Below are positions 11,340-48,787 of a stretch of DNA of 64,000 nt, piece after piece. The first letter of the stretch is position 1. Every line of letters begins with the position of its first letter. Origin of the DNA: Botryllus schlosseri (taxonomy: Eukaryota). The notes below the pieces were generated by a model that worked only from the letters and a program-made list of their open reading frames with translations, had not been told where the DNA came from and did no database searches. The DNA lies in NCBI GenBank assembly GCA_051294905.1, contig CM119373.1, positions 6,572,001-6,636,000 on the forward strand. Direction: 5' to 3'. The translations under genes and the position numbers were made by a program.

Positions 11340-12261
11340 TGCGTCCGGTGCGAAATTCCTCTTCATAACGCGTTTCTTTATCGACGACTTCACGAATATA
11401 TCTACCATCCGGCTCACCAATGTACATATCAGAACGGTCCATTACGCACTGATTCCTTTTATACTTTACGTCCCTACTTAGCGACACGCATTTTTTTGCG
11501 TTTCGAGCAAGTCTGCGTTTTCGTCTCCGTGACGTCCGCTCGGGCAAGTCTGGACCTGTCTAAACCTGCTCGACCCACTCTCGTTTTAAAATTCTCTCGT
11601 TTCGGTGGGTCAAAGTATATTAACATAAATAAACAAGAATTTTCATATTGGTGAATTCCCCTAAGCTACACCATGCGCTTCTACACTTGCTAATGTTTTA
11701 AACTCTACGGTTATCTCTCGTGATCTTGGTATATCTCGACAGTCATCGTTGTTTTTCCTGTCCAGTTCGGCCATGTTTGAGTACATATAGATAGCCCGCT
11801 GTAGTAGTTCTGACTCCTCCATTTTGGCCAGTCTTTTACATGCATCCAAGGGCTCCCTTCACTATCTTGAAGTAATTGATTTGCGTCTTCTGCGCTGTCC
11901 ACTACCGATATGCTCTTTTCTAGCTTCATCTCATGTTTTCGGGACGTTGATCCATAACCAAACGACTTTTTCGTCCCTCCTTCTTGTTCTAGTATGAACA
12001 GTTCTGGCTCTTCCGTTGCCCCAATATTGTCATTCGACGATACTACTTGTAGATACGTCTCAGTAACAGTGTCTTTCGTGCATCCCGTAAGTGGCGTAGA
12101 TTTGTCCTTATCTGTCCATTCGTTTAGCCACAACATTGGTGGCCCGTTATTTCCCGTAAATTCTCCATCCGTAGATGTTTCCGAATTCGTCATGTGACCT
12201 TCCTCATTGTATGTATATTTTGTGCTTGCTTTTTTCGGCCTCGGCACGAATGCGTACGGGT
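11340..12261 (-). mobile_element. Virus-like element copy A (divergent lineage), distal part: capsid-like C-terminus, intergenic block and start of the basic ORF
   Basis: Translation aligns to copy B with 150/174 identical residues by hand (PYAF...TMTV). A 2-nt frameshift lies near 11735. 'MDRSDMYIGEPDGRYIREVVDKETRYEEEF' matches the copy B ORF at 24503. Confidence 0.9.
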
Positions 12262-15200
12262 CAAGGCCCGAACTACTGCTATCTCCGGCTAAGCAAATTC
12301 GCGTGATTCCCATGCGCAGATGCATTGTGGGTAGGTACACGGTTAAGTGATTTACTACATGGGCTTATGGAAAAGCGGTCAGTTTTTAAATATATTTGAT
12401 TCGTATCGGGTCCGTAGTATTTTATGCGTATAGAGCTTTGAATGACTAATTATTCTAACACTCAGGATTTGTTTCAGCCTAATATCTCGTGTCAGTATAT
12501 TGATATTATGTGTAATTCGACCTGTCGAAGATAGCCCATTCATCAGGTGGTAGTGGTAGTCTTTGCTGTGTCGGGGTTGGTGCAGTAAATGGCCGAAGAA
12601 GATATCCAATGAGTCGTATGCAAGAAGTATTTGTGACGGCAGTTGTGATGAAGAGTCGATAGTAAAGCGTCGATACCCCAGAACTTTTTACCGGTAAGTG
12701 AATAACAGAATAAGCATAGCAGCAAGACATGTATGTCCAGATCTGCCACAGTTGTAATAAATAGGTCATGGTAAAGTGATAGCAGAACATTTCGTTGCCG
12801 CTAAATGAATGAAATGACCAGACCAGACTACCAGCAGAAATCCGTGTCAACATATCAGCTATGTAATGTTCATCATCAATATCTGTAATATTCTGTAATA
12901 ATGCCAATCTCACTCTTCGTATTTCGGCCAATAATCTGCTTAGTATTTAATTCTGGCTTATGCTATGTAGGCATGATGAGCAGGACTACAGGGAAAAGAT
13001 ACAATTCATGACCAATGGGTTTTCTTCAACATAGCTAAAAAAGGATATCTTTTTCAGATGATAAACAAATACTGTGGAATTTGCAAATTCCATCGTCGAG
13101 TTCATCTACAAATTCCATCGTCGAGTTCATCTACATAGTCCTCATAGTGTTGTTCGAAACTGTCAATTTATTTATTCAGACACATTTTTCAAGGTTTACC
13201 TTTGAACTGCTTTAGCTTTAGAAGGCTGCCTCAATCTTGAATACAATAGCCTATGGAGTGAAAAGTGACAGATAATTTTATCAGACAAGATATCACAGCT
13301 CATAACAAAGAATTGTATTTCGTGTGCTTTGCTTCATACAATGCTCCGTATAATGCAGCATTCCTACTAATGAATCGCTGAAAGGAAGATGGTTAGAAAA
13401 CATTAAAAGAAAAAACTGGGTTCCATCAAGATCGTCAGTCATCTACTCCGATCATTTTCCGGTAAGTGCCATTTACCGTGTGGGCCAGTTGATACGTTTC
13501 AGGGAGAATGCGGTGCCAACGAGATTTCTGAACTCTCCGAAATATACGAGGTCAAAGGTACAGTAGGCATCTATAAATTTACTTCTAAAGTTTGCCTTTG
13601 TTGATGTGAAATTCTTGAATTTTAGGCTTCCAACAAACGGCAAGCGAGACTAGCAACACTTCAAGATAAGAAACGTCATTGTAAAGCACAAACCGGTGAA
13701 GCAGTTGTCCATGACCACAGTTACTGTGCACGTACCTCTCCTCAAAAGCTCATTCAACAGCAACGCCGTAGAGTGGTACAAATTAAAAAGAGGTTGCATG
13801 CTGCCAAAATGCGGACAGGCCACCTGAGAAAAAAAGTGAAAACTCTATATGAGGTCATTGCATCTCTAAAAAAAAAATGATCAGCGATTTGTATGGAGAA
13901 GTAATGTCACAAAAATTCTGTCTTCTACCAAGTGAGCTGTTGCAGCGCATGAAGCTACAAGCTGGTGGAAGAGGAGTCAAATACTCTAAAGAACTGCAAT
14001 CATTTGCAATGACGCTGCAGTATTATTCTGCTGAACTGCAATCATTTCCAATGACGCTGCAGTATTATTCTGCTATTTTGTGCGTCAAAATTTTCAACTC
14101 GCTCTTCCCCATCCGAGTGTGATAAGAAGCTAGTATGGAAAACTTCCTGCTGAGCCTGGCTTTACTGGTATTGCATTTTCTGCTACAAGAGGAAAAGTAG
14201 AGGCATCAACAACTCCCGCAGTGGGGTGGCCTTCCACGTCACTGTGCCGCGACAAAAAAGGAGGTCTATTAAATTGCAAATGCGATCAGAATGGGTTAGT
14301 TTATTGTACCAAGATCTCAGATATTAAGCCCTAACTTATCCCACATTTTACTTTCAGTTCACCCGCAATTACGTCGAGGGCGACGTCAAGTCAATAACAA
14401 TTTAATTTATTTCTGTTTTTATTTTTTTATGTTGTTATTTTAATAGAAAAATCATTCAAACCTCGCGTTTCTCATTCAAACCTCGCGTTTCTCATAACTG
14501 AAGCTGGTGTTACTGAAAACGAAAGTTTTGGTACGAGACAGTACAGCGCGGTATTTCCTGTGATCCCAGAAATGGTTGATCGAAAGTCAGGTTGGAATGC
14601 TGCGTCTATTAGGGAAGGAAGGGATCAGGTAGGCAGCAACCGCGTGATCCCAGAAATGGTTCATCAGAAAACGCACTAGGTAGAAATGCTTCATCTAGCA
14701 GGCAAGGAAAGGATCATAGGCAGCCACTACGTGATGCCTGGCTGATCTGATATATTGACCTTGCTTTCCGTCGCATGCCATATTTTTTTGTCGCTTGATC
14801 TTATATGGTATCTTAGTTAGAACTATTAGTTTTCATCCAGCGTACCCTGTAAATGCCTCCTCTTTACTTTGCCTAGGCCCAGGTGGGTGTAGATTACCTC
14901 AGGCCGTTGCGTTACCTTGCTATCTTTTCATCGATGATTAATCTGATTAAGTCAATTTCAGTGAGCACTAGGCAATTCTACCCTGATCTGAATATGGACT
15001 CGTGCATTCATCTTGTAATTCTTGTTTCTCTCATTCGATGATATAAATATAATATTTCTATCATTTGATTACCTCTGCAGAAATCGCTAACCCATATTGC
15101 TACACATAACTCACATATCCTCACTTCAACTTTCTAGGATTTATTTGGACCAATTTGACACAATGAATAAGTAGAATAAAAATTAGATCGTATAAATTTG

Positions 15201-16011
15201 ATTGTAGTTGTGCTTTTGCGATGTCACATGATGCTGAATTTTCCTCCGTCAGTGGTATTCATAGCCACTACGTAGCTGGCAGCAATAGCATTGACATCAG
15301 CGCCATTGTAGTGAGAAGATTTCGAATCGAATCCAGGGCGATTCTGAGGCAGTCTCTGGTAGTAACTTGAAGCTGGTGGTCATAGCCATAGATGCTTTTA
15401 CTACCGTACCTATAGATACAGTGCCTGAAAGATAACAACAAAACTGACATGCAATGCAATCAGTTGATAGCTTGGTTAATTATTTACACTTGAAATGTGC
15501 CTGTTTGTTGTTTTCAAGATTTGTAATAGTAAATTGTTTGTTGTTTTTCAAGATTTGTAATAGTAAATTACAGTGTGTGCTTGTATCAACAATTCGAGGA
15601 CGCAGTACATGAAACTGAAGCTATAATGCGTAAGAAGACAACATCAGCAAGCTCCATTAGGATTAATGGCATCATATCTAAATCAAATTGCCATACACAG
15701 TAGCCTACCTGAAACTGAAGCTGTATAGGGATAAAGAAGACAACATCACCAAGCTCCCCGAGTTTAGCAATCTACATCAGGAAGATATTTGCAAATGAAT
15801 ACATACGGTGACACATATATAACCTTATCTTGTCCGAACCATCGAAATTAATACCTCCAGGCCAAGGAGTAATCAAAACAGTCACATCACCCATCCACTT
15901 TTGCCTTGACTACCAGCTTAACGCGCAGCTATCAACTTAACCCAAAGATGGCGGCCAATGGATCACGCAAATATCGCGAGTAGCGCACTCCAGTGTTTAT
16001 ATAGCTCAGTG
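12262..16011 (+). mobile_element. P-element-like insertion (THAP9-type remnant) splitting virus-like copy A
   Basis: 8-bp TSD gtacgggt at 12254-12261 and 16012-16019; the viral frame H-P-Y-A-F is restored on removal. CA...TG ends. THAP remnant 'WLENIKRKNWVPSRSSVIYSDHF...NAVPT', a DHSY motif, and 'YSKELQSFAMTLQYYS' at ~13300-14150. Confidence 0.85.
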
Positions 16012-16660
16012 GTACGGGTGCCTTAGTGTTGTCCGATAATCCTTTATCCTAAAGTAGCGGTACATTTTTAACGGATTGAATCCTCTTTCAGAGTCCCACG
16101 GCCAAACTCATTTTCTTTTTTTTGTTCTTGAACGCGCTCGACGTTGATCCCGTTTCGACTGGTAATGCGAAACATTCTTCACGGATACCACTTTCTCTGA
16201 AGTGACCGTCACCATATGTGTCCAGCTGTCCACCCACTCGTGATCGATCTGGTTAGGCGCCGTTGTGGTTCCCGTTTCTTTTTTCGTGCAAAACTTTGCG
16301 ACCTCATTGATTTTTATTCTGTACTCTGCTGTTTCCGTTCCCTTCCAGAGAAACCCTGCCACTGTATGAACTCCCGTGCCCCCAGCGCCGCCTCCGGAGC
16401 TCCGCACAGTTGGCTCGCTCCCAGCAAAGCCCCCCATCTTGCCAATCGTGCTGTCCGCCGCCATGGTGACCCTTTTTCCTTCGCTATCCGGTGTAATTCT
16501 TTTTGGCTCGGTCTCTCCGGTCTCTGGTGTAGCCCCTTGTTTAGTAGGCCTCCCGCGCTTTCGTTCGCCACTTGTTCCAGTTCTGGACTGTGAAACGCTA
16601 CTGTCGCTAGGAATATTCTCTCCTCGCCACTTGTTCCTGCTCCTTCAGTTGCTTCTTTTT
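16012..16660 (-). mobile_element. Virus-like element copy A, proximal part (Gly-rich start of the capsid-like domain and overprinted ORF)
   Basis: 'MAADSTIGKMGGFAGSEPTVRSSGGGAGGTGVHTVAGFLWKGTETAEYRIKINEV' is homologous to copy B 23229 onward. Frameshift from a short tggaca duplication near 16225. Upstream boundary approximate. Confidence 0.9.
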
Positions 16661-16814: not shown

Positions 16815-19800
16815 AACATACACATATATATACACATACACATATTACAACATATATACACATACATGCGCACATATCCATACTTACATACATATAATGG
16901 CCTCTTTATGGTTTCATGGGCCCGCTACATACTCATATGCACGGAGGGGAGGATGCTGCGCATTTACGCTAGTACAGTCAGGAGTCTATCTAAAATCATT
17001 GGAAGTTGGCCTTTTAGGCGGAGTCTTGATCTCGCCGTGTTCATGACACGTTTGGTTGTGGAGTTTATGTACACGGTTATGTCGCTTTCCATTTCATTTT
17101 CCACTTCCAATATAATTCGGTTTTGTATTACTGTTTCTTTGTATATGGTCACGAGGAGTTTCGTTGCGAGATTGTTCTTGTCCCAGTTCTTTTCTTCAAG
17201 GAGTGTTCCGCTTAGGGATGCCCTAGCTCCCGTCGCTTGTCTCAGGGATGTTTCTAGTCGATCAAGTATCTGACGAGCAATTGGGCATGTATACAGGATG
17301 TGGTCTAGTGTCTCTTTTTTACATCCACATTGTCTGCATGATGTTATAGCAGGTTTTCCAGTTTTATGTCCTAGTATAGTCTTTTGTTTTCTCTTCCAGC
17401 CGAATAGGTATCCGTCGCAGGCGATACGGTATGTTGTAACTCTTTCTTTGTTTTTGATCAGGCCGGATACGTATCTGTTTTCATTGCAAGTGATTTCCAA
17501 TTGATTTCATTGTTTCCTTGTTGGTCTGTATTCCCATGTATATTTTTGATTTCATTGTATATGTCTTTTAGTGACGCTGTTTGCCAGTCTTCTTGTTCCC
17601 AATTTAGCTTTTCGGCAATGCTTATATTCATTTTCCATTGGTTTGATAGAAGTGTGCGGTGTGGCATGCTATTTGTAAAGAGTGGGTCGTTCTATTTCCT
17701 GATCGTGGGCCCAAGCTCGTATAGGGCGTGGAAGTGCCTATACTCCGTTGGATGTTCTATTCTCGACAGTTTTGATATTTTTTCCAGCTCACATGCCTTG
17801 GCCTGGCTTTGGGGGTGTAGGATGTTCATTCCGCCTTCTTCTGGTTTGTTGTTCTTCTGATTATCTCTATTTTTTCAGGATGCCAAAGATATCTGAAAAT
17901 CGTTCTCATGAGGCGTGCTGTAAATTCTGGCGTGGGAGGTATGGTCCTTGCATGTAGGGTTATAATTGAGGAAGCGAAGGAGTTTATTACGTTCTTTTTT
18001 CCCATCCACGTGAGCTGACGGTGGGAGTTGCTCATTAGCTTTCCTTCGATTTTCTTTATGACGCCCTCCCATGTTTCGTTTACCTGATCGTGTCCAAAGT
18101 GCTGTCCTAGTATCTTGATGCTTTTAACGAAGTTTCCTTTGAATTTTTGTTCTCTTATGTGGTCTAACGCAGGGGTCGCCAACTCAAAATAGGTCGCGGG
18201 CCACTTTTCCAAATTCCTGGAGGCCGCGGGCCGCATGACATCAATATCGATATAAAAGTAGGCAACGCAGTTCAACAACCACGTCTGATAACTCTACGGT
18301 ATTACAACGCTGTGCTTTCTAACATAGGCGACGGTTATAGTCACCACAGAAAAACTAATATTTTATTGAACAAACACAAATACAACAAAAAGTATCATGA
18401 TCATCAATGTCATTATATTTTGGACTATGAGCTGTACACGATACCTGACAATGACAACACTCTTTAGCCGCTAAAACAGGGGTGGCCAACATTTTTGTAA
18501 TTCACGGCCGCATTTCGCGTACTCATGTAGCCTGCGGCCGCATACCGGTGGTTAGTCGTGATACACTAGCTGGGGCCAAATACCCACGTTACCATGTCCA
18601 TGTCCATTGCCGGTACACTCCGAACTAATCTATATGCACATATCGGCTTACTATGCGCACCAAATCGTTAGTAGTTATGTTGTAAAGAGCCACAGAGAAC
18701 CAATCTGTAGTCGCGCGAAGCGCGAAAAATTTTTCATGTTCATGAGTGAATTTCGTCAATAAATATTAGTATAGTTTCACATATTACTATAAAATATTTA
18801 TCCTTTATCGGCCAATGTGTTCAGATCCCCAGATACAGCTGATATGCAGGGGGTATCTGCGAAAACTTAGGGTTGTTATTACAAGTGTCGACAGCCGCAT
18901 AATTTTCCTTCTACTGCTGCAGATTGGCCACCCATGGATTGAAGAATCAATATTGGGGTTAGCTATACACGGTAGGCCTACTTGCTAGACAACTATCTCC
19001 TCGTAAAGCATGGTTTTTGGAGCGCCCGAAGTCGTTTTGCAGGCGTCTCGGTCTTGGCAGTGGTGGGCCATTGCACGTCAAGGCAATATGTCCATTCGTA
19101 CCAGCAAATTCTTCATCCATGGAATGATATTACCATGCCGAAGCCGTATCAACTAGTGAGTAATAGTGATAGTGGGCACATAGAATGGCTCACTTTGAAA
19201 AACAACAACATTATGTTTCAACTGCAATCAATTTTAGCGTTTCAACATGATTTACTAAGCGTTTTTCTGCATTTTTTTCAAATCAGGTCGCGGGCCGCAA
19301 AATAGGACCTCGCGGGCCGCATGCGGCCCGCGGGCCGCGTGTTGGAGACCCCTGGTCTAACGTGTTCCCGATGCACAGGATCTGAGTTTTTTCTTTGTTT
19401 ATTTTTTGCCCTGTGGCTTTTTCGAGGTATTCAAATTCTTCGTACGCTCTCTCGATCGACTCCAGCTTTGTCGTGATGATAGTGAGGTCATCGGCGTATT
19501 GCTGTGTCTTCATATTGTGTTTGCCAATTTTACATCCTGTTATGTTTTTGTTCCCCAAAATTTTGATCATCAGGGGTTCCGCTGTCAGGGTGTAGAGATA
19601 CATCGATAGTGGACATCCTTGTCTCAGCCCTCTTTGGATGGGGATTTTGTCTGTGATGAATCCGTTTATCCAGATGCAGCTTGTGGCATTGTCATATAGT
19701 TTTTTAATCAATTTTATTGTTTTGGTTCCGAAATTGAATTTTTCCAATATTTGGAATATTTTTCTAATATTAGGAATATATATGGGTGAGGGACACGGTC

Positions 19801-22029
19801 AAAGGCCTTTTCCTGGTCAAAGTTTGCTATGATGATTGGCTGTTTCTTTTCTTTCTGGTATTCCATTACCGATTTTATATTCCGTAGTAGATCTGACATT
19901 TGCTTCGATGGGACAGCGCATTTTTGTTGGGGGGATATTAGATGGTCAATATTTTCTTTCATTCTGTTCGTTACGATTTTCATCATGATCTTATAGTCGA
20001 CATTTGTCAGGGAGATAGGTCTCCAATTCTTCAGCATCTCGGGATCTCCCTTTTTGAATATGAGGTTCACTGTTGAATCCGTCCATGTATTGGGCATGCT
20101 GTTTAGGAGTAGAGCGTTGTTGTATAGTTGGACTAATTCATCCTTAATAAGGTAGTAGAAGGTAGAGTAGAACTCTGACGATAGGCCGTCTGGCCCGGGG
20201 GACTTAAGTCTTTTTTTGTTGCTCGATTGCATATTTTATTTCCTCTTCTAGGATTGGCAGGTCTTGTTGCTCATGCTGTTCTTTACTTAGGAGTTCCACT
20301 AGGTTTTTTTGCATCTTGGCATTTGTGTTTTCATTCATTTGCCAAAGTTCTTGGTAGAAGGAGTAGACTTCTTGTATTATTTCTTCTTTGTTTTCTGTTA
20401 TGGTCCCGGATCGTTTTTGTACTCGGGCGATTGATTTCCGTTGTTGCTTTGTTTTTAGTTTTTCAAAGAATTCACGGTTTGGCTTCTCGTCCTCTTCTAG
20501 CTCTTCCCTGTATAGCAGTTTCATTTGGTGGTGTAGTTTGTCTTTTTCCATTTTCTTCAGGTTTTTTAGGATGGTTTTTCTCTCATTTGAGGGCAGGTTC
20601 TTTGATGCGAGTTGTTGATGGAGTGTGTTCTCTTTTTCTTTTTGTTTTCGTTTTTCCTCTATCCCGAAAGAGATGGCAGTTTTTTTATTTATTTTTGTTT
20701 TAAAATCATCCCACCACTGTGCGTGGTTGGGGTATTCTACTTTCCTCAGTGCGGCTTCTTCATATTTTGATTCCAGTATTTTCCTGAATTGTTTCTTAGC
20801 ATAGTGGGTTGTATTATTTTTCCAGTTGCCGCCACCCCATTTCTCCGGGTCTTTTGGCTTTACGATGATTCTGAGGTAGTAGTTGTGGTCTGATATTCCG
20901 TTTATATGATGCTTGACTGATGTCCTCGAGCGGGCTATTTCTTGAGTGGTATAGACCCTATCTATTCTCCTTGAGTTGAGATTGTTTGCATTTGTATACA
21001 ATCTTGTAAATGGATAGTGCCATCTGTATAGGTCTATGATGTTTTTCTGCATTGTATATTCCTTCCAGATTTTTGCTGCTTCAGATAGTTTGAAGGCGTG
21101 ATGTTTTTCGCTATCTTCTTTGGCCGTAATCATATTAAAGTCCCCCGCTATAATCATATTTCCATGGTACAGTTGAAGGTTATGCGTTACTTCCTTGTAG
21201 GAGGTCTTTTTTCTTTGTTATTGGTTGGCGCATATATATTTACTATGGTTAGTCTGACCTCGTTGTTGGCGCTGAGGCTTAGGGTCTGGACCCTGTCTGG
21301 CACAATGATTTGGTGGTCAAGGGTATAGTCTCTCACTTTTTCTTTTTTTATAAGAATGGTGGTTCCCTTGTAGTAGTGTTTGTCTCCGGCCTGGTGTGGT
21401 TCTGAATTGAAGTTTTTGTAGTATGGGAGATCGTTATTATTAGCCCATAGTCTAAATTTCCTTTCATGTAGGCGGTGGACTTCTTGGACGCAGTATAAGT
21501 CCGCTTTTGAGCTCGTCACGAAGTGTCTGAATTCGTCCCAGCGTCTCTGTATACCATTTACATTTATGGAGATTAGGTTACATCCAAGAACTCCCGTTTG
21601 TTGATTTGTTTCTTCTGGAGGTTGGGTAGGGGTTTGGCCTTCCATTTCAAGGTAAAAAAGGGGTTTGCGTTGCTTTCTTCTTTTATTTCGTATGTTTTGA
21701 TTTTTTTCTCATCTATTTTTTTGTATTTTTTTTTTTTGTCATTTTTTCCTTCCTCGGGGCTGCTGTGGTAGGCTCTCTTTGGCCTTGGGGTATTTTTGTT
21801 TTTTTTTTTGTTCTAATGGGATGGGGTTGCAATCCAGATGCTTGAAAATCTCGACTTGGAGGGGTTCCGATTCCGTTTTATGTACACTTGATACTCTTTT
21901 CCCTCTATTTCTGTTTCTTGGGGGGATTTTGGGGGGTTCCGAGGAGTCAGATGGTTCAGGATCATGCATTTTTGAGGGGGTTTTGTTTTCTGCTGAGCCC
22001 TCTGGGTTTAATTAAGTCTTCCTGATTGG
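16815..22029 (-). mobile_element. L1/Tx1-clade LINE, 5'-truncated within ORF1, ORF2 frameshifted
   Basis: APE endonuclease 'LISINVNGI...YCVQEVH', 'IIAGDFN', 'RRIDRVY'; RT 'KSPGPDGL', 'NWRPISLTNVDYK', 'DQEKAFDRV', 'GLRQGCPLS', 'QYADD'; C-terminal 'CRQCGCKKETLDHILYTC'; (TATG)-like 3' tail at ~16815-16895. Confidence 0.95.
18170..19354. mobile_element. Non-autonomous hAT element inserted in LINE ORF2
   Basis: TIRs caggggtcgccaac / gttggagacccctg. 8-bp TSD gtctaacg at 18162-18169 and 19355-19362. LINE frame (GNTLD|HIREQ) rejoins on removal. Confidence 0.95.
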
Positions 22030-24290
22030 AAGGATGGAGATCGAGAGGGGCAAAATTAAGAGCGGAGGCGGAGGCAGCAAGAATAGAAAGAGAGAAAGGA
22101 TGGACACACGCATTCGCAACAGCGAGAAGGAGAGAATACGATGCAATACATACACCAGTGAGGGATCATCTTGGAATACCAGGAATGCAACATTTCCTGG
22201 AAGCATTGGGATTAATAGGCGAAACGAACATAGATAATGTAAAAGAAGCAACATACAAATGGGCAAAGTCAAAAATCGAAGAACTGAAAACAGCACTGGG
22301 AGAAGACACAATGGTGGGACAACTAGTGGACGAAATGTTTGTAGTGGATAGTACAGGACAGTCCGACTGGCATGACCTAGAAAATTACAGACAATCAATC
22401 ATGGACATAGTAAATCCAGAAAGATCAGCAGAAGAAAGAAACGAACTAAATCAAGAAGAGTTAGGAGAAGGAGTAACAGAAACGAATAAATATGGGACAG
22501 GAATAACAGAAGAGATCGAGAATGAAGAAGAATACATATACAGTGATGAATCAGATACAGAATTAGACCAAGAAGAGCTGGGAGCGGGAGTAACTGAAAA
22601 TGACCCAGAGGGAATAACAGATGAGATAGAAGAAAGAGAAATAGAAGAATTCGAAGAATACTGTGACATGAGATTATCGGAAGTGGAAAGTGAGAATAGA
22701 TATGCACAGCAGTGGGCGCAATACGAAACGGCAGTAGAGGAAGCATTCAACAGATTTCAACAAAGACGTCATGAACAAAGGGGAACACCAATAATGCAAT
22801 GGCAAATACCGGGCACGAGAAGGAGATGGGAAGGGTTAGGAAGAGCATTGAGAGTGGCGATACCTAGGAAACGTAATAGAAGGGGGTGGATAAAGGACAG
22901 ACCAGGGTATTGGATGAGAAAAGACGGGAAAATAGAAAAAAGAAAAAGGCGACTGCCTCTAGAATGTATAAATATCGCGAACGAGCGGAGAGCTGCCAAA
23001 AGAGCGAGAGATGCAGCAGGAGAAGGAGCAACAACAGAAGGAGAGCCAACAGAAAAAGCCGGAAGAGTTGAGAGCAGCGTACCTAGCGACACTGGTACTA
23101 CACAGCCCAGTACTGGAGGAAATAGCGAACGAAAGCGCGGGCGGGATTCTGAGTCAGAACGTGGGGAAGAGACCGGAGAGACTATCCCAAAAAGAGTTAC
23201 ACAAGAGAGCAAAGAAAGAAGGGTCGGAATGGAGGCGGACAGCTCGGCTAGCAAAATGGGGGTTGCTTTTGGGGGCGAGCCAAGTGTTAGGAGCTCCGGA
23301 GGTAGCGGAGGCGGCGCTGGTGGGAGCGGTGGCGCTGGGGGCACAGGAGTGCATACGGTGGCGGGATTCTTGTGGAAGGGAACAGAAACCGCCGAATATA
23401 GAATAAAGATAAATGAAGTGGTGAAATTTAAAACAAAAAAAGAAATAGGAACAACTGCAGCGGGAAATCAGATCGACCACACATGGGTGGACACGTATGG
23501 AGACGGACATTTTAGGGAGAGCGGAATAAGAAAAGAATGTTTCGCACTACCAGCAGAAACGGGAAGCACAGCAAGTGCGTTCAAAAATAAAAAGAGAAAA
23601 AGGGTTTGGCCATGGGATACCGCGAGGGGATTCAATCCACTGAAGATGTATAGGTACTTCAGGATAAAGGATTACCGAACAACATTAATGCATCCATATG
23701 CCTTCACACCAAGACCGAAAAAAATGACAACGTCATATGTATACAACGAAGAAGGGCATCTACAAAGCTCAGTGACCAATACAGACGGAGAATTTACAGG
23801 AAATAATGGGCCACCAATGATGTGGCTAAATGAATGGACGGATAAGGACAAGTCAACGCCATTGACAGGATGTACAAAGGACACTGTAATAGAAACATAC
23901 TTACCTGTAGAGAGTACAAACGACACAATTGCAGCGACAGAAGAACCAGAATTATTCATACTGGAGCAAGAAGGTGGAACAAAAAAAGCATTTGGATACG
24001 GGTCATGCTCTAGAAAACATGAAATGAAACTAGAGAAATCAATCTCGGTAGTGGACAGTTCAGAAGACGCAAATCAACTACTTCAGGACAGCGAAGGAAG
24101 CCCGTGGATGCATGTTACAGACTGGCCAAAGTGGAGAAGCCAAAACTATTACAGCGGACTAAGCGTGTGTACTCAAACATGGCCGAATTGGACAGGACTA
24201 TCAACCATGACGGTCGACATACCAAGATCGCGCGAAATAACTGTAGAGTTTAAAACTCTAGCTAGCGCGGAATCGCATGGTGTCGCATAA
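22030..24290 (+). CDS. Distal ~753 codons of the 905-aa large ORF; C-terminal 353 aa (from ATG 23229) is a probable single jelly-roll capsid domain
   Basis: Uninterrupted frame. Acidic tract, then Arg/Lys-rich tract and RKRGR, then a Gly-rich stretch, then a beta-rich region with 'MYRYFRIKDY' and terminal 'ITVEFK', reminiscent of ssDNA-virus capsid strands. Capsid identity is by resemblance only. Confidence 0.6.
23011..23406 (+). CDS. Overprinted 131-aa ORF in an alternative frame of the large ORF
   Basis: Homologous open frame in divergent copy A (16314-16571 and upstream) with a stop at the equivalent position (NIE* vs STE*). Identical in copy C (40957-41352). Confidence 0.65.
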   Translation: MQQEKEQQQKESQQKKPEELRAAYLATLVLHSPVLEEIANESAGGILSQNVGKRPERLSQKELHKRAKKEGSEWRRTARLAKWGLLLGASQVLGAPEVAEAALVGAVALGAQECIRWRDSCGREQKPPNIE

Positions 24291-24332
24291 GGGGAATTCC
24301 CTAATTGTATATATTTATTGCATTGTTACGTT

Positions 24333-24338
24333 AATAAA
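24333..24338 (+). promoter_or_regulatory. Candidate polyadenylation signal of the large ORF
   Basis: AATAAA 43 nt after the stop codon. Not retained in copy A. Confidence 0.45.
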
Positions 24339-24392
24339 GGTTGACCCACTCAGACGAGAAAGTTTTTTTCCTTGGGTGGGCCAGGGCAGGTT

Positions 24393-24449
24393 CAGACTTG
24401 CCCGAGCGGACGTCACAGAGACGAAAACGCGGACTTACTCGAAACGCAA
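24393..24449 (+). promoter_or_regulatory. Conserved non-coding cis-element of the virus-like unit
   Basis: 54/57 nt identical to copy A 11496-11552 (reverse complement). Contains GACGTCA and two GACTT(G/A)C(C/T)CGA repeats. A TATA-like tataataa follows at ~24482. Confidence 0.75.
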
Positions 24450-24502
24450 TTTTATAGTGTCGTTTAAGTAAGGATGCAGACTATAATAAGGCTCATTTGG
24501 AT

Positions 24503-24841
24503 ATGGACGGGTCTGACTTGTATATTGGCGAACCCTGTGGAAGAATTATAAGAGAGATTGTGGATTACGAAAGTAGATATGAAGAGGAATTTAGCTGCCG
24601 ACGAGAGTTCGAATGCATCAAGGACGAGCGTGCCTCAAAGTTACTCAAGCGATTCAAAGAGATTGCGAATAGACGAAGAAGAGAGGTCCGTGAAGGGGGC
24701 AGGAGATGGAGAAAATTCAGAGCGTGGCACGATCGCTACCTTCGGGCGACCCTGACGCGGCCCTATCGGGCCGCAAGGGTCAGGGGTCGCAACGCTCTCT
24801 TAGCCTATTTTGGCTTCGATCGCGTTACTAGCACACCCTAG
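24503..24841 (+). CDS. ~112-aa basic protein of the virus-like unit
   Basis: The first ~30 residues and the start Met are conserved in copy A. Arg-rich C-terminal half. Function unknown. Confidence 0.65.
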   Translation: MDGSDLYIGEPCGRIIREIVDYESRYEEEFSCRREFECIKDERASKLLKRFKEIANRRRREVREGGRRWRKFRAWHDRYLRATLTRPYRAARVRGRNALLAYFGFDRVTSTP

Positions 24842-24916
24842 GGTAAGAAGGTGTCCTTACCCTAGGGTGTGCTAGTTGACCCACCCAAAAAAAAACATTC
24901 CGAGCTGGGTGGGTCA
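24746..24916. repeat. Cluster of three stem-loops (candidate origin or fused termini)
   Basis: GC-rich bulged hairpin 24746-24790; perfect 21-bp stem 24827-24847/24856-24876 with 8-nt loop; 11-bp stem 24877-24887/24906-24916. Confidence 0.9.
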
Positions 24917-24923
24917 GGAAGGA

Positions 24924-24931
24924 TATAAATA
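24924..24931 (+). promoter_or_regulatory. TATA box candidate
   Basis: TATAAATA immediately after the hairpin cluster, 28 nt upstream of ATG 24959 (A at -3). Confidence 0.6.
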
Positions 24932-24958
24932 GAGGCTGAGTGGCGAAAGTGATTCAAA

Positions 24959-25201
24959 ATGAGCACGTACGAGGAGCTGAGCGGATTGGTGAAAGACTGG
25001 AAGCACACGGAACAACTGAAGTGGAGCTATCTAATCAAAGAAGTACTGAACCTGATATTGTTGATAGCGATTGTGGGACTGCTAAGTATAGTTCACTACA
25101 ACGTGACAAGAATTCAAGGAGCGGAAAGACTGAGAAGATTCGCAGACGTAACAGGAGGGCCACCAAGATACGAAGAAACGACAACAACTTTTGAAGCATA
25201 A
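24959..25201 (+). CDS. 80-aa predicted single-pass membrane protein with PPxY motif
   Basis: Hydrophobic 'VLNLILLIAIVGLLSIV' and C-terminal 'PPRY'. Its stop overlaps the next ATG (TAATG, 25199-25203). Present only in copy B. Confidence 0.6.
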   Translation: MSTYEELSGLVKDWKHTEQLKWSYLIKEVLNLILLIAIVGLLSIVHYNVTRIQGAERLRRFADVTGGPPRYEETTTTFEA

Positions 25202-25669
25202 TGACAAAGGCGTTAGCTGTATTGAACAATGTACGGAAGAATGTGAAGAAAATAAATAAACTGAGATCTGCATATACGGAAAATCCAATCTCAAAAGCAG
25301 CAAGAGGGTACCAGAAATTGAAAAAGATAGAGAATGGGGTGGCAAATATTAAAAAAACATACAAAAATCCAATACGAAGAATATACGCAAAATGGGAAAG
25401 AGTGACAGCGAAATTAAATGAGTGGGAACAGGGATACAAAGGAGTGCAAATGGGCATAAGCATTTTCCAATCAGCAACAGGGGCGTTAGTGGAAGATATA
25501 AACAACGGGATTGATTATCCAAGAGCTGTGACAGCAGTGATACAAAGAAGTCTGGAAAATTGGGACAGAGATAAATTAGAAGAAGGATTAAGGATATTAA
25601 AAGTACCAAGAGGAGAAATTGGGAGAATAGGAACGCACTTGCAGAACAACGTGTTCCAAGGATGGAGAT
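25201..25669 (+). CDS. N-terminal ~156 codons of the 905-aa large ORF (continues at 22042 in the circular form)
   Basis: Ends ...NNVFQGWR, and copy C shows ...NNVFQGWRSRGAK contiguous. The ORF-track tail beyond 25669 is flank read-through. Confidence 0.8.
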
Positions 25670-27289
25670 GGACCAAGAATATGGTCAAGCTAGCAATTCG
25701 GCTTTTGAATGGTGTTGTGGAATCAGTATCTTCCAGAGTCCTAACACAAGATGTTCTGGAAGCAGCATTTGGATCTTGGGTAACTTCAGTTGACATTCAT
25801 TAATATTATTCACGAATGTTAAAAGTTAACAGCGGTCTTCGATGAGATACAGCAGGAATCCAGATATTAGCCAAGTCAGTTACTCAGTAAATGCCTTAGG
25901 CCAGCGTTTATGCCAGCGTAAGGCTATAAAGAGAGGGAAAGGTGCCAATACAACATAAGCCTATGTTGATCAAAATTCTTGGACAAAAGTCGGCTAGGAA
26001 CCCATGACCAAGAAAAGATGCAGCAAATGAAGCGAATGTAGTTTCTGGTAGTGTTAGTATGGTAGTTTTTTTCGCCCTGTGGCAAATGCTGCCTATCCGC
26101 ATTCCACATTGAGATTCCCTACCTAAAAAAGGAAAAAAATGCGTTTGTCGAAACCTTGACGTGGTGCATTGGCTGTCTACTAATGTCACTGGCAGAGGTC
26201 TTCCAAGCGAATTCCAGGGTATTTTTGGCAATGACAACGAGTTCCATTCAAGTGCGATTTTGCATACTTACAAGGAGTAAGCTCTGACTATTGTGAACCG
26301 AGATCAAGCAGAACATTGACATTACACAAGGCTCTGGTTCTAGTCATACTCAAGTTTCTGTGGTTATCGGACAGGCACACAAGACTACAAGACTGTTGCG
26401 ATATTATTTGTTATATTCATAGTCGAATTTCTGCAGTTAATATAGGATATATTTTCAATCAAAGCTATTGTGAACTGCATATCGATATAGTTCAAGATCT
26501 TTCCACTTGTTCACTTTGTAGTACTCTTCAGTCGTCCTTTCCATGAATTCATCTCACAATAGCCAATGTACACGAACCAGATATTCTATTTACCTTCTGT
26601 CATTATATTTATATATGTAGCAAACTCGATAAAGGATCAAAGCCACAATATCACATCAATCTCGTGAGAAATGTAACATAGGCTACACGGTAATATTCAC
26701 TAGTCATAACCACTCGCCACCGCTACCTAAATGTTGAACTGTCCAACTAAATCCGACGCAGCTTCAAGAAATACATGACGAATCGCCTTGAACGCCATAG
26801 AAACAAGCGCTGAGCGATCCTGTTTTGGGTGCAGCCATCTGACCGTGACCATTCTGCCGGCTAACAATGGGAGAACAATCGAGTCGTCACTCCAGTCATA
26901 CTGTATAGTGCAACAATGATGATAGGTAGGCCACACGTATAATATTCACTCGCGACCCCAACTCGCGACAATCTCACTTTCTCACTAAAACGAGAGGGTA
27001 CGTCATCGCGAAATGAGAAAAAATAGATCAAGCATGAGTGCGTCCGGCAGGGGTCGCAATTTACAGCGTACGCTAGCTCGAAAATGAAAATGTGCGATCT
27101 TTCGTAAAGCTTCAGAGTCGCGAACGCTGCGTTTTATACATCTTCAACACATTCGAAAAGATGCTACAGCTACGGCATACGAGATATGTTGGCCGGGCAG
27201 ATGGCACGTTGGGCGTTGAAAGCAGGAATGCGAAGCTTGCATTGCTCTGGGTAGCAGTAAAAAGGAAGCACAGGCGGAGGACTAGGCAC

Positions 27290-39004: not shown

Positions 39005-39701
39005 CTAAAACTACCATGTGGCTTTTTTGACGCATGTTGAATCTTCTTCAATTAAATGCATTTACCGGAGCTAAAAATCAGCACAAATCTCAACAAACGG
39101 CATCAGAAACCATTGTTTATTGCGCTCATAGCTATACTTGCAATATTTTACACACACCTTAGGTCAACACTTATATGTTACACCAAAAAACGGCGATTTG
39201 TTTTATAAGTGTTGCTCTGGTGCGCATTTGGTGTTTGAGCACGTTCTTTAAAAATTTAGAGTAGGTTCCAGATCCGCTTTAGCCACATCATCATTGTTGG
39301 TTATTGCTGACATATCATAAAGCTTATCAGATTAGATTTGCATAATTCAATTTTGCAACTAATCCTCGATTTGCATATTTTTAGAGTATCGGCATTTTGG
39401 CAAGTAGACGATCATTCACATTCTAAGAAAACATGCACGGACATCGTCGACTTGTTGGTACCCTCATAGAATACTGCCTTGCAACCTGACCAATAATATT
39501 CCCCTGGTTTTGTTTCGTTATAACATTTAACCGTCACTGGTTTCTTGTTTGTGCTGTTTCTGAAGGAAACAGTTACCTCAGGTTGCAGTGAACTCAATAT
39601 ATATGTGTACAAATTCGATCTCTACACTGGCATCTCGCCGTTACGCTTATCAACAAGATGATAGCTTTGAAAAGTGTGGCTACATGAAGCTGCCTGTGGT
39701 C

Positions 39702-42700
39702 GTAGCGATCGTGCCACGCTCTGAATTTTCTCCATCTCCTGCCCCCTTCACGGACCTCTCTTCTTCGTCTATTCGCAATCTATTCCAATCAGCAACAGGG
39801 GCGTTAGTGGAAGATATAAACAACGGGATTGATTATCCAAGAGCTGTGACAGCAGTGATACAAAGAAGTCTGGAAAATTGGGACAGAGATAAATTAGAAG
39901 AAGGATTAAGGATATTAAAAGTACCAAGAGGAGAAATTGGGAGAATAGGAACGCACTTGCAGAACAACGTGTTCCAAGGATGGAGATCGAGAGGGGCAAA
40001 ATTAAGAGCGGAGGCGGAGGCAGCAAGAATAGAAAGAGAGAAAGGATGGACACACGCATTCGCAACAGCGAGAAGGAGAGAATACGATGCAATACATACA
40101 CCAGTGAGGGATCATCTTGGAATACCAGGAATGCAACATTTCCTGGAAGCATTGGGATTAATAGGCGAAACGAACATAGATAATGTAAAAGAAGCAACAT
40201 ACAAATGGGCAAAGTCAAAAATCGAAGAACTGAAAACAGCACTGGGAGAAGACACAATGGTGGGACAACTAGTGGACGAAATGTTTGTAGTGGATAGTAC
40301 AGGACAGTCCGACTGGCATGACCTAGAAAATTACAGACAATCAATCATGGACATAGTAAATCCAGAAAGATCAGCAGAAGAAAGAAACGAACTAAATCAA
40401 GAAGAGTTAGGAGAAGGAGTAACAGAAACGAATAAATATGGGACAGGAATAACAGAAGAGATCGAGAATGAAGAAGAATACATATACAGTGATGAATCAG
40501 ATACAGAATTAGACCAAGAAGAGCTGGGAGCGGGAGTAACTGAAAATGACCCAGAGGGAATAACAGATGAGATAGAAGAAAGAGAAATAGAAGAATTCGA
40601 AGAATACTGTGACATGAGATTATCGGAAGTGGAAAGTGAGAATAGATATGCACAGCAGTGGGCGCAATACGAAACGGCAGTAGAGGAAGCATTCAACAGA
40701 TTTCAACAAAGACGTCATGAACAAAGGGGAACACCAATAATGCAATGGCAAATACCGGGCACGAGAAGGAGATGGGAAGGGTTAGGAAGAGCATTGAGAG
40801 TGGCGATACCTAGGAAACGTAATAGAAGGGGGTGGATAAAGGACAGACCAGGGTATTGGATGAGAAAAGACGGGAAAATAGAAAAAAGAAAAAGGCGACT
40901 GCCTCTAGAATGTATAAATATCGCGAACGAGCGGAGAGCTGCCAAAAGAGCGAGAGATGCAGCAGGAGAAGGAGCAACAACAGAAGGAGAGCCAACAGAA
41001 AAAGCCGGAAGAGTTGAGAGCAGCGTACCTAGCGACACTGGTACTACACAGCCCAGTACTGGAGGAAATAGCGAACGAAAGCGCGGGCGGGATTCTGAGT
41101 CAGAACGTGGGGAAGAGACCGGAGAGACTATCCCAAAAAGAGTTACACAAGAGAGCAAAGAAAGAAGGGTCGGAATGGAGGCGGACAGCTCGGCTAGCAA
41201 AATGGGGGTTGCTTTTGGGGGCGAGCCAAGTGTTAGGAGCTCCGGAGGTAGCGGAGGCGGCGCTGGTGGGAGCGGTGGCGCTGGGGGCACAGGAGTGCAT
41301 ACGGTGGCGGGATTCTTGTGGAAGGGAACAGAAACCGCCGAATATAGAATAAAGATAAATGAAGTGGTGAAATTTAAAACAAAAAAAGAAATAGGAACAA
41401 CTGCAGCGGGAAATCAGATCGACCACACATGGGTGGACACGTATGGAGACGGACATTTTAGGGAGAGCGGAATAAGAAAAGAATGTTTCGCACTACCAGC
41501 AGAAACGGGAAGCACAGCAAGTGCGTTCAAAAATAAAAAGAGAAAAAGGGTTTGGCCATGGGATACCGCGAGGGGATTCAATCCACTGAAGATGTATAGG
41601 TACTTCAGGATAAAGGATTACCGAACAACATTAAGGCATCCATATGCCTTCACACCAAGACCGAAAAAAATGACAACGTCATATGTATACAACGAAGAAG
41701 GGCATCTACAAAGCTCAGTGACCAATACAGACGGAGAATTTACAGGAAATAATGGGCCACCAATGATGTGGCTAAATGAATGGAAGGATAAGGACAAGTC
41801 AACGCCATTGACAGGATGTACAAAGGACACTGTAATAGAAACATACTTACCTGTAGAGAGTACAAACGACACAATTGCAGCGACAGAAGAACCAGAATTA
41901 TTCATACTGGAGCAAGAAGGTGGAACAAAAAAAGCATTTGGATACGGGTCATGCTCTAGAAAACATGAAATGAAACTAGAGAAATCAATCTCGGTAGTGG
42001 ACAGTTCAGAAGACGCAAATCAACTACTTCAGGACAGCGAAGGAAGCCCGTGGATGCATGTTACAGACTGGCCAAAGTGGAGAAGCCAAAACTATTACAG
42101 CGGACTAAGCGTGTGTACTCAAACATGGCCGAATTGGACAGGACTATCAACCATGACGGTCGACATACCAAGATCGCGCGAAATAACTGTAGAGTTTAAA
42201 ACTCTAGCTAGCGCGGAATCGCATGGTGTCGCATAAGGGGAATTCCCTAATTGTATATATTTATTGCATTGTTACGTTAATAAAGGTTGACCCACTCAGA
42301 CGAGAAAGTTTTTTTCCTTGGGTGGGCCAGGGCAGGTTCAGACTTGCCCGAGCGGACGTCACAGAGACGAAAACGCGGACTTACTCGAAACGCAATTTTA
42401 TAGTGTCGTTTAAGTAAGGATGCAGACTATAATAAGGCTCATTTGGATATGGACGGGTCTGACTTGTATATTGGCGAACCCTGTGGAAGAATTATAAGAG
42501 AGATTGTGGATTACGAAAGTAGATATGAAGAGGAATTTAGCTGCCGACGAGAGTTCGAATGCATCAAGGACGAGCGTGCCTCAAAGTTACTCAAGCGATT
42601 CAAAGAGATTGCGAATAGACGAAGAAGAGAGGTCCGTGAAGGGGGCAGGAGATGGAGAAAATTCAGAGCGTGGCACGATCGCTACCTTCGGGCGACCCTG

Positions 42701-48754: not shown

Positions 48755-48787
48755 CCCGAAGCTTTTCGAACTGACACTTTTCAAGGG
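48755..48787 (-). ncRNA. Minimal type I hammerhead ribozyme (C3U/G8A variant), element-sense copy
   Basis: ccc-UUGAAAA-GUGUCAGUUC-GAAA-AGCU-UC-ggg on the minus strand. Confidence 0.65.

What the first reader, a model, noticed from the sequence alone, without database searches (positions are those of the whole stretch)
23229..24290. Capsid-like domain with a conserved internal start codon and Gly-rich N-terminus
Seen: both lineages have a Met at the same place (MEADSS 23229; MAADST 16464), preceded by RKRGR and followed by a Gly-rich run of variable length, then a highly conserved Trp/Tyr/Thr-rich region (86% identity over 174 aa by hand). Known: parvovirus capsid proteins are nested N-terminal isoforms with a Gly-rich segment. 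'YRYFRIK' and a terminal 'TVEFK' resemble beta-strand motifs in circovirus/CRESS jelly-roll capsids. Inference: a 353-aa major capsid protein plus a 905-aa minor isoform, with features intermediate between parvoviral and CRESS capsids.
Basis: partly seen in the sequence, partly recalled or inferred. Interest (0 to 1): 0.8.

Follow-up and report, generated by a model that had tools for sequence, protein, structure and literature searches.

The report
Capsid gene of integrated unknown virus
The flagged stretch is the shell-protein (capsid) gene of a small DNA virus from a lineage not described in any library I could search. The virus has left three copies of itself in this animal genome, and its protein is predicted to fold like a circovirus capsid while its gene is laid out like a parvovirus capsid gene.

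Summary
Window 23229-24290 is the last third of a ~2.7-kb gene that occurs three times in the window. Copies A (22030-25672) and B (39783-42750) are 99.9% identical; copy C (minus strand, 11342-16617) is older and broken. AlphaFold with an 11-row alignment gives a moderate model (pLDDT 53). Its best matches in PDB and BFVD are all virus jelly-roll capsids, circovirus capsids first (E 1e-5 and 5e-8). Pfam and PDB give no sequence-level match. A full-length relative (851 aa, 36% identity) lies on a 5.3-kb metagenome contig. That contig has the same small membrane ORF upstream and a 658-aa P-loop, Rep-like gene downstream; the window copies keep only about 55 codons of that gene. Copy A is a circular permutation of one 3.6-kb unit, with 12 nt repeated at its two ends. 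The internal Met (MEADS[ST]) has a strong start context, is conserved in four lineages, and marks where conservation begins. A nested short capsid protein is plausible but unproven. The '905-aa isoform' is read-through into a LINE; the real long form is about 850-910 aa. Best reading: endogenous copies of an undescribed small DNA virus.

The parts
23229..24290 (+). The finding: nested ORF from the conserved Met to the stop (353 codons), copy A
   Evidence: The Met has a purine at -3 and G at +4.
23229..23348 (+). Conserved MEADSS motif followed by the Gly/Ser-rich hinge
   Evidence: The motif is conserved in window copies A and B, copy C (MAADST), P0007 and L004. Conservation between the window protein and P0007 rises at this point.
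23349..24287 (+). Predicted jelly-roll capsid domain (313 aa)
   Evidence: AF2 model m000f1c41b451; Foldseek against PDB and BFVD.
22030..25672 (+). Copy A: one circularly permuted unit of the element (3,628 bp) with the same 12 nt at both ends
   Evidence: Self-comparison; three-way junction alignment.
22030..24290 (+). Capsid gene, last ~754 codons, copy A (no stops or frameshifts)
24333..24338 (+). AATAAA signal 43 nt after the capsid stop, followed by an imperfect hairpin (~24340-24385)
   Evidence: L001 has AATAAA at the same place.
24579..24755 (+). 5' remnant of the third, Rep-like P-loop gene. It is truncated: about nine tenths of the gene are missing through one deletion. Copy B has the same remnant at 42525-42701.
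   Evidence: 44% identity to residues 1-55 of P0009, E 9e-8.
24827..24916 (.). Two adjacent hairpins: a 21-bp perfect stem with an 8-nt loop, and an 11-bp stem with an 18-nt loop
   Evidence: DNA fold, z = -9.3, no shuffle of 200 folds as well.
24924..24931 (+). TATA-like box 28 nt upstream of the small ORF
   Evidence: L001 has the same layout.
24959..25201 (+). Small ORF (80 aa) with one hydrophobic helix and a PPxY motif. Its stop overlaps the capsid gene's ATG.
   Evidence: Homologous to the 73-aa ORF of L001.
25201..25672 (+). Native 5' end of the capsid gene (157 codons), copy A
   Evidence: 31% identity to residues 56-163 of P0007.
39783..42750 (+). Copy B, 99.93% identical to copy A. 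It lacks the hairpins, the small ORF and the first ~88 codons of the capsid gene.
39588..42236 (+). 882-codon open frame of copy B. The nested ORF and jelly-roll domain are at 41175-42236.
39702..39790 (.). 89-nt inverted duplicate of 42597-42685 (part of the Rep-like remnant), abutting the left end of copy B
   Evidence: 97% complementary.
11342..16617 (-). Copy C: an older, diverged lineage of the capsid gene (58-92% aa identity) plus its 3' flank. It is broken by a 5' truncation, one large insertion, one in-frame stop and about three frameshifts.
16964..21645 (-). Neighbour: a LINE (endonuclease plus reverse transcriptase). Its 5' side adjoins the left end of copy A and its 3' side lies next to copy C.

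Best explanation
The region encodes the C-terminal jelly-roll core of the structural (capsid) protein of a small DNA virus, integrated in an animal genome as an endogenous viral element. Shown: the gene occurs in three copies belonging to two lineages. Those lineages diverged under strong purifying selection, that is, while the gene was functional. Relatives on metagenome contigs carry the same three-gene layout, all on one strand: a hairpin region, a TATA box, a small membrane ORF whose stop touches the capsid ATG, the 850-900-aa capsid gene, a poly(A) signal, a second promoter-like region, and a ~550-660-aa P-loop Rep-like gene. Copy A is one unit-length circular permutation, which implies a circular or head-to-tail template at integration. 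The window copies have lost about 90% of the Rep-like gene. Inferred: the protein works like a parvovirus VP. A long form carries an N-terminal extension of variable length, with acidic and basic (nuclear-localisation-like) clusters. A flexible Gly-rich hinge joins this extension to the jelly roll. A shorter form starting at the conserved Met (353 aa here) would be the main building block of a T=1-type shell. The long form may be made at low level by termination-reinitiation after the small ORF. The short form would need its own (spliced or internally started) mRNA, or processing of the long form. The copies in the window cannot replicate on their own because the Rep-like gene is truncated.
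For: Fold: the AF2 model built on 11 rows (pLDDT 53, pTM 0.52, about 11 strands) matches circovirus capsids first in PDB (E 1.3e-5 to 4e-4, probability 1.00, TM 0.39-0.54 on the target length). Picornavirus, densovirus and tombus-like jelly rolls follow, and all top 50 matches are virus capsids. BFVD gives 188 matches at E<=1e-3, the best at 5e-8, and nearly all named ones are capsids. Selection: pN 0.108 against pS 0.77 between copies B and C. Relatives: P0007 is 36% identical over 817 aa, E 3e-130. It lies on L001 and L002 with the small ORF and the 658-aa P-loop gene. P0009 is a second Rep-like protein, from the same sample as the closest capsid relative P0001. Genome form: 22030-24804 equals 39976-42750 and 25465-25672 equals 39783-39990, with 12 shared nt at both ends of copy A. 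L001 has an 82-nt repeat 5,128 nt apart. Strong hairpins lie upstream of the TATA box in both lineages. Nested start: ATGGA(A/G)GCGGAC with a purine at -3 and G at +4 is found in the window, L001 and L004, although the surrounding linker is unalignable. The N-terminal extension varies from ~300 to ~530 aa among lineages. Parvoviridae and Bidnaviridae are the ssDNA families with Gly-rich capsid N-termini; the others have Arg-rich ones (PMC11945456).
Against: The model is only moderately confident (142 of 313 residues below pLDDT 50) and rests on a shallow alignment. TM-scores are 0.3-0.5. No sequence-level similarity to any capsid family or solved structure was found, even with the family profile. 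There is no evidence of particles, of transcripts, or of strandedness. The third gene is recognised only as a P-loop NTPase (AAA_16, E 9e-5, below Pfam's cut-off), so calling it 'Rep' is inference from motif order. The nested start has no demonstrated mechanism: 24-36 AUGs precede the conserved Met and they are not depleted, which argues against leaky scanning, and I saw no obvious polypyrimidine acceptor just upstream. L001 is not a clean circle, because its first 137 nt differ from the expected wrap-around. L001 and L002 may come from one biosample.
Confidence: 0.75

Rival explanations
1. Same virus-derived capsid gene, but only one long polypeptide (about 850-910 aa) is made. The conserved Met-Glu-Ala-Asp motif would then be a structural or processing signal, for example a maturation cleavage site or the anchor of the hinge, and not a second start codon.
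For: Upstream AUGs are not depleted: 24 in the window copy, 36 in L001 and 15 in L004, all within one sd of codon shuffles. I saw no TATA box or clear splice acceptor in the 190 nt before the Met. The frame is continuous across the Met in all lineages.
Against: The Met codon itself and a strong start context (purine at -3, G at +4) are conserved at the nucleotide level in lineages only ~30-36% identical overall. Conservation starts exactly there. The extension upstream varies almost two-fold in length. A capsid made only of 900-aa subunits would have to house 60 large extensions.
Confidence: 0.3
2. A mobile element of the host, not a virus. On this reading it is a transposon-like or rolling-circle element that happens to carry a capsid-like gene and multiplies within genomes. 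That would explain three copies within 31 kb and the inverted repeat flanking copy B.
For: There are three copies in one 64-kb window. An 89-nt inverted repeat brackets copy B. The relative lineage is also found joined to unrelated DNA in L003. No relative was found in IMG/VR.
Against: No transposase, integrase or reverse transcriptase lies within the unit. There are no target-site duplications of host sequence. The 12 nt repeated at the ends of copy A are element sequence, as expected from breakage of a circle. The inverted repeat of copy B is absent from copy A, so it is a local rearrangement and not a terminus. The compact three-gene layout with Pol II-type signals and a jelly-roll capsid is that of a virus.
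Confidence: 0.1
3. A domesticated or ordinary host gene family that only mimics a capsid fold. Jelly rolls also occur in cellular proteins.
For: The ORFs are intact in copies A and B. There is purifying selection between lineages.
Against: A and B differ at 2 of 2,775 nt, so their intactness reflects youth and not selection. Copy A is permuted and copy B has lost its native start. Copy C is broken several times. Only 6 hits, all short fragments, came from 1.84 billion representative proteins. None of the 50 best structural matches is cellular.
Confidence: 0.05

Closest known systems
Circoviridae and other CRESS-DNA virus capsid proteins (PCV2, BFDV and bat circovirus structures)
   Same: They are the best structural matches of the predicted domain in both PDB and BFVD. 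Both are single jelly rolls of roughly 200-300 residues. A stem-loop region lies next to the genes, and the genome is probably circular.
   Different: There is no sequence match to the circovirus capsid family. The N-terminus of the core is Gly-rich and acidic, not Arg-rich. The core is the tail of an 850-910-aa protein. The relative's genome is ~5.1 kb with all genes on one strand, not 1.7-2.1 kb and ambisense. The replication gene is not recognised by any Rep or helicase profile.
Parvoviridae VP1/VP2 (nested capsid proteins), including small densovirus capsids
   Same: The gene has the same architecture: a long N-terminal extension with basic clusters, a Gly-rich hinge, then the jelly roll, with a conserved internal Met just before the hinge (PMC11945456). 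The genome size is similar (~5 kb). Pol II promoters and poly(A) signals are present. Densovirus capsids appear among the weaker fold matches (probability 0.82-0.95).
   Different: No parvovirus or densovirus coat family, no phospholipase A2 domain and no NS1 family matches. The gene order puts the capsid before the Rep-like gene. Copy A indicates a circular or concatemeric template, not a linear genome with terminal hairpins. The fold matches are weaker than those to circoviruses.
Anelloviridae (ORF2 followed by large ORF1, TATA box, hairpin-rich untranslated region)
   Same: The layout is similar: a hairpin region, a TATA box, a small ORF, then one very large capsid ORF and a poly(A) signal, on a small and probably circular genome (this comparison is from my own knowledge of the family).
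   Different: There is no match to the anellovirus ORF1 family. The jelly roll is C-terminal, not N-terminal. There is no Arg-rich N-terminus. A separate P-loop gene is present in the relatives.
Endogenous viral elements derived from circoviruses and parvoviruses in animal genomes
   Same: The copies are integrated, partly degraded, sit among host transposons and come from more than one virus lineage at one locus.
   Different: The source virus belongs to no family that the tools recognise. Two copies are essentially undegraded in the capsid gene, and one is a complete permuted unit of a deletion variant.

Membership tests
Parvoviridae capsid (VP) | Sequence membership in the parvovirus or densovirus coat protein families (Pfam) | tested here: not met
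   No Pfam hit for the window protein, P0007 or any of 8 family members at E<=10.
Parvoviridae capsid (VP) | Phospholipase A2 domain in the unique N-terminal part of the long isoform (present in most members) | tested here: not met
   No Pfam hit in residues 1-404 or in the whole protein.
Parvoviridae capsid (VP) | Gly-rich stretch at the N-terminus of the major capsid protein, directly before the jelly roll | tested here: met
   The run of G/S/A after the Met is seen in the window, P0007 and L004. The family trait is described in PMC11945456.
Parvoviridae capsid (VP) | Nested N-terminal isoforms sharing one C-terminus | tested here: inconclusive
   The Met and a strong start context are conserved, but upstream AUGs are not depleted and there are no expression data.
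Parvoviridae (genome) | Linear ssDNA genome with terminal hairpins and an NS1 protein with an SF3 helicase of the parvovirus NS1 family | tested here: not met
   The permuted unit-length copy implies a circular or concatemeric template. The third gene does not match the NS1 family. Strandedness cannot be tested with these tools.
Circoviridae / CRESS-DNA capsid | Single jelly-roll fold of the circovirus type | tested here: met
   The top 15 PDB matches are circovirus capsids with probability 1.00. BFVD top matches are circovirus and CRESS capsids. Caveat: the model has a mean pLDDT of 53.
Circoviridae / CRESS-DNA capsid | Sequence membership in the circovirus capsid family; Arg-rich N-terminus | tested here: not met
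   No Pfam hit. The N-terminus of the core is acidic and Gly-rich.
Cressdnaviricota (genome) | Rep with an HUH endonuclease plus an SF3 helicase recognisable by profiles; stem-loop origin with a conserved nonamer | tested here: inconclusive
   P0008 and P0009 have a Walker A motif and a motif order that looks HUH-like and SF3-like by eye, but there is no profile or PDB match. Hairpins are present. The loop of L001's hairpin holds a T/A-rich nonamer ending in TATTAC; its likeness to known origins is from my memory only.
Anelloviridae ORF1 | Sequence membership in the ORF1 family; N-terminal Arg-rich region followed by the jelly roll | tested here: not met
   No Pfam hit. The jelly roll is at the C-terminus.
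Endogenous viral element | Virus-derived sequence integrated in a cellular genome, flanked by host sequence | tested here: met
   The copies lie between a LINE, a Harbinger-type transposase and a Penelope-like element. The flanks of A and B are unrelated. Copy C is degraded.

The most novel reading that the evidence does not exclude
The window holds endogenous copies of a family-level, so far undescribed group of small (~5.1 kb), probably circular, animal-associated DNA viruses. Their capsid gene joins a circovirus-type jelly roll to the parvovirus-type design (long extension, Gly-rich hinge, nested start), and their replication protein is too divergent for any current profile. Such a lineage could sit between CRESS-DNA viruses and parvoviruses.
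Probability: 0.35. Interest if true: 0.85.

Novelty: new variant of a known kind. Interest (0 to 1): 0.72.

Why it matters
Small DNA viruses are classified mainly by their Rep and capsid proteins, and the origin of parvoviruses from circular Rep-encoding ancestors is inferred rather than observed. The group found here combines a circovirus-like capsid fold, a parvovirus-like capsid gene design and a probably circular ~5-kb genome, so it would give that question a concrete object to study. The group is almost invisible to current searches: 6 fragmentary hits among 1.84 billion representative proteins, none in IMG/VR, and no Pfam family. Profile-based virus discovery and annotation of endogenous viral elements therefore both miss it. 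The nearly undegraded copies in this genome, together with the metagenome relative, provide enough sequence to build the first profiles.

Tried and rejected
- Pfam scans of the 882-aa protein, the 353-aa part, the N-terminal 404 aa, P0007 and all 8 members of the family alignment found nothing relevant. The only hit was a sub-threshold DUF4860.
- PDB sequence searches with the protein and with the family profile returned only Gly/Ser linker noise, or nothing.
- The word-index protein search with the full protein found nothing, and with the family profile it returned only two fragments already known.
- Single-sequence AlphaFold was useless (pLDDT 31).
- IMG/VR and JGI metagenome scans with capsid and Rep-like alignments found no relatives. 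Two earlier attempts failed for lack of conserved columns.
- Rfam and the tRNA scan of the window found nothing.
- Exact look-ups of the window protein from two ATG starts, meant to find the host record, were not on record.
- A literature look-up of the sample accessions found nothing. Two topical literature searches found no description of this group.
- I first read the minus-strand A-rich region left of the ORF as an ambisense partner gene. I rejected that because it is a LINE.
- I first read the 89-nt inverted repeat around copy B as terminal repeats of the element. I rejected that because copy A lacks the left arm.
- Leaky scanning as the route to the short form is unlikely.
- The ORF at 24497-24841 showed no significant similarity to P0008. 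The significant similarity lies in another frame, to P0009.
Full report
**1. What is at the coordinates.**
The window looks like an animal genome. It is ~41% G+C and crowded with transposons: a LINE with endonuclease and reverse transcriptase at 16964-21645 (minus strand), a Harbinger-type DDE transposase at 27935-28648, and a Penelope-like RT/GIY-YIG ORF at 49215-50120. The flagged ORF (23229-24290) is the last 353 codons of a long open frame, listed from 22026. A second copy, 39588-42236, is open for 882 codons.

Self-comparison shows that 22030-24804 equals 39976-42750 at 99.93% identity, and that 25465-25672 equals 39783-39990. I call these copy A and copy B. A third, diverged copy (C) lies on the minus strand between 16617 and 11342, with 58-92% amino-acid identity by segment.
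- The Met sits at 16464 in copy C.
- RKRGR lies about 30 residues upstream of the Met in both lineages.
- The Gly-rich run is 9 residues shorter in C.
- The tail is 83-92% identical.

**2. More than chance.**
Over 173 gap-free codons, copies B and C differ at 49% of third positions but at only 12-13% of first and second positions (pN 0.108, pS 0.77). The two lineages therefore separated while the protein was under strong purifying selection, and they entered this locus separately. Copies A and B differ at 2 of 2,775 nt, so their intact frames reflect youth.

**3. State of the copies (counts only).**
- Capsid gene, copy A: no stops or frameshifts, but the gene is circularly permuted. Its first 157 codons (25201-25672) lie downstream of its last ~754.
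- Capsid gene, copy B: one 5' truncation. The native first ~88 codons are replaced by an inverted 89-nt duplicate of downstream sequence. There are no stops or frameshifts.
- Capsid gene, copy C: one 5' truncation, one large insertion, one in-frame stop and about three frameshifts.
- Rep-like gene: one deletion removes about nine tenths of it in A and B alike. Both copies share sequence beyond the remnant, so both descend from the same deleted variant. Copy C ends within the first codons of this gene.
- Small ORF: intact in A, absent from B and C.

**4. Relatives.**
- Nothing matched in Pfam or by PDB sequence search.
- The word-index search with the full protein found nothing.
- A full HMMER pass of the 313-aa core over 1.84 billion representatives gave only six hits, all short fragments of 54-213 aa.
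- One of those clusters hides a full-length member, P0007 (851 aa). It is 36% identical to the window protein over 817 residues, E 3e-130.
- P0007 lies on L001 (JGI sample 3300050205, 5,347 nt) and on L002 (Logan SRR35794526). L002 is 100% identical to L001 over 5,008 nt and may come from the same biosample.
- All L001 genes are on one strand: a 73-aa ORF with one hydrophobic helix, the 851-aa gene starting directly after its stop, an AATAAA signal, two 48-nt direct repeats and a TATA-like box, a 658-aa gene (P0008), and then a long imperfect hairpin. An 82-nt repeat sits 5,128 nt apart.
- P0008 has a Walker A motif (GQAGSGKT) but only sub-threshold AAA hits. It matches no NS1, Rep or helicase family and no PDB sequence.
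- Its one relative, P0009 (52% identity), comes from SRR25569784. That is the same sample as P0001 and P0003, the closest capsid relatives of the window (64% and 68% in the representative search).
- By eye, the P0008/P0009 alignment shows an order of conserved motifs compatible with an HUH-like domain followed by an SF3-type helicase. This is inference, not a test.
- IMG/VR and the JGI metagenome collection contain no relative of either gene.

**5. The unit in the window.**
Copy A reads as follows:
- the capsid gene's last ~754 codons;
- AATAAA (24333-24338) and a small hairpin;
- a promoter-like stretch;
- a 58-codon remnant (24579-24755), 44% identical to the start of P0009, E 9e-8;
- two strong hairpins (24827-24916; z = -9.3);
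- a TATA-like box (24924-24931);
- an 80-aa ORF (24959-25201) homologous to L001's small ORF;
- the capsid gene's native first 157 codons, up to 25672.

This is the same circular order as in L001. The left and right ends of copy A carry the same 12 nt of element sequence, and the length between them is one unit (3,628 bp). This is what integration of a circular or head-to-tail molecule, broken at one point, would leave. L001 is not a clean circle, because its first 137 nt differ from the expected wrap-around. The physical form therefore remains circular or concatemeric, and strandedness is unknown. L003 joins a 396-nt piece of the relative's capsid gene to 3.7 kb of unrelated DNA, which looks like another integration junction.

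**6. Fold.**
Single-sequence AlphaFold failed (pLDDT 31). With an 11-row alignment the model reached pLDDT 53 and pTM 0.52, with about eleven strands. The rows were the window core, three intact stretches of copy C entered as separate rows, P0007 and P0001-P0006.
- Foldseek against PDB: the first 15 matches are circovirus capsids (BFDV, PCV2, bat circovirus), with E 1.3e-5 to 4e-4, probability 1.00 and TM 0.39-0.54 on the target length.
- Picornavirus, densovirus, tombus-like and polyomavirus jelly rolls follow. All 50 listed matches are virus capsid proteins.
- Against BFVD there are 188 matches at E<=1e-3, the best at 5e-8. Nearly all the named ones are circovirus or CRESS capsids, and one is a 'parvo-like hybrid virus' capsid.

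The caveat is the moderate confidence of the model.

**7. The internal Met.**
The motif is MEADSS in A, B and P0007, MEADST in L004 and MAADST in C. At the DNA level it reads ATGGA(A/G)GCGGAC, with a purine at -3 and G at +4, in the window, L001 and L004. Between the window protein and P0007, the 60 residues before the Met have 8 identities and 32 gaps. From the Met onward identity is 40-90% per 20-residue bin. The extension upstream varies from ~300 aa (L004) to ~530 aa. All this fits a module boundary and a second start.

Against a simple mechanism, 15-36 AUGs precede the Met and they are not depleted. I also saw no evident acceptor or TATA box just upstream. The stop of the small ORF overlaps the capsid ATG in the window and abuts it in L001. 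This suggests, by inference, coupled low-level translation of the long form.

According to PMC11945456, Gly-rich capsid N-termini are a trait of Parvoviridae and Bidnaviridae, while other ssDNA families have Arg-rich ones. The design is therefore parvovirus-like although the fold match is circovirus-like.

**8. Verdict.**
The capsid fold and the hybrid character hold. The nested 353-aa protein is plausible but untested. The '905-aa isoform' is an artefact, because the frame upstream of 22030 is not element sequence. The thing itself is an endogenous, replication-gene-deficient copy of a small DNA virus from a lineage that no library here recognises.

- One search printed BLAST segment alignments of the broken copy C residue by residue, so an in-frame stop is visible there with coordinates. 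I also reasoned about approximate places of its breaks while reading that output.
- Consensus lines printed by the alignment tools were not used.

Noticed in passing
window 24959-25201; L001 235-456: The small ORF upstream of the capsid gene has one hydrophobic helix and a PPxY motif near its C-terminus in both lineages (PPRY in the window, PPTY in L001). Its stop overlaps or abuts the capsid ATG in both. It could be a small membrane or egress protein, with the arrangement giving translational coupling.
   Followed up: partly
window 39702-39790 and 42597-42685: An 89-nt inverted duplicate (97% complementary) of part of the Rep-like remnant is fused to the left end of copy B and is read through as the start of the 882-codon frame. 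Copy A has no such arm. It may be a snap-back or rearrangement product formed at or before integration.
   Followed up: partly
window 24340-24385 and 24877-24916: Two hairpins share the stem motif GACCCAC/GTGGGTC. One follows the capsid poly(A) signal and one precedes the TATA box. L001 instead repeats GGTAC/GTACC about nine times around its hairpins (1-220 and 5171-5330). These may be lineage-specific iterons.
   Followed up: no
L001 3027-3163: Two 48-nt direct repeats lie between the capsid poly(A) signal and the third gene. Between and around them are three GCGGGAAAA-type motifs and GGACGTCC palindromes. From memory these resemble cell-cycle or cAMP-type promoter sites. Untested.
   Followed up: no
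L001 5221-5274: The apical region of the long hairpin after the Rep-like gene contains a T/A-rich nonamer ending in TATTAC. From memory this resembles the nick-site nonamer of circular Rep-encoding viruses. No equivalent was seen in the window's hairpins.
   Followed up: partly
L003 3767-4162: A 396-nt piece of the relative's capsid gene (92% nt identity to L001) is joined to 3.7 kb of unrelated sequence at the end of an ENA metagenome contig. It is probably another integration junction, in a different host.
   Followed up: partly
window 12260-16011: About 3.75 kb of unrelated DNA splits copy C. It has no terminal repeats that I could find and contains short tandem repeats (42-nt units at 13982-14065, 25-nt units at 13079-13128). 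Its nature is unknown.
   Followed up: partly
window 16964-21645 (minus strand): A LINE with several separate ORFs (endonuclease and RT pieces) sits exactly between copy C and copy A, which point away from each other. Whether it inserted between them or brought one junction with it is unresolved.
   Followed up: no
window 48721-50303: The Penelope-like RT/GIY-YIG ORF (49215-50120, minus strand) is bracketed by a 190-nt inverted repeat (48721-48910 and 50114-50303, 99.5%). A 276-nt direct repeat lies at 48842-49117 and 49116-49390.
   Followed up: no
window 22030-25657; L001: The coding strand of the element is strongly purine-rich in both lineages (A 37-38%, G 26-28%). This is what produced the AT- and GC-skew peaks at 22-26 kb and 40-42 kb in the composition profile.
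   Followed up: yes
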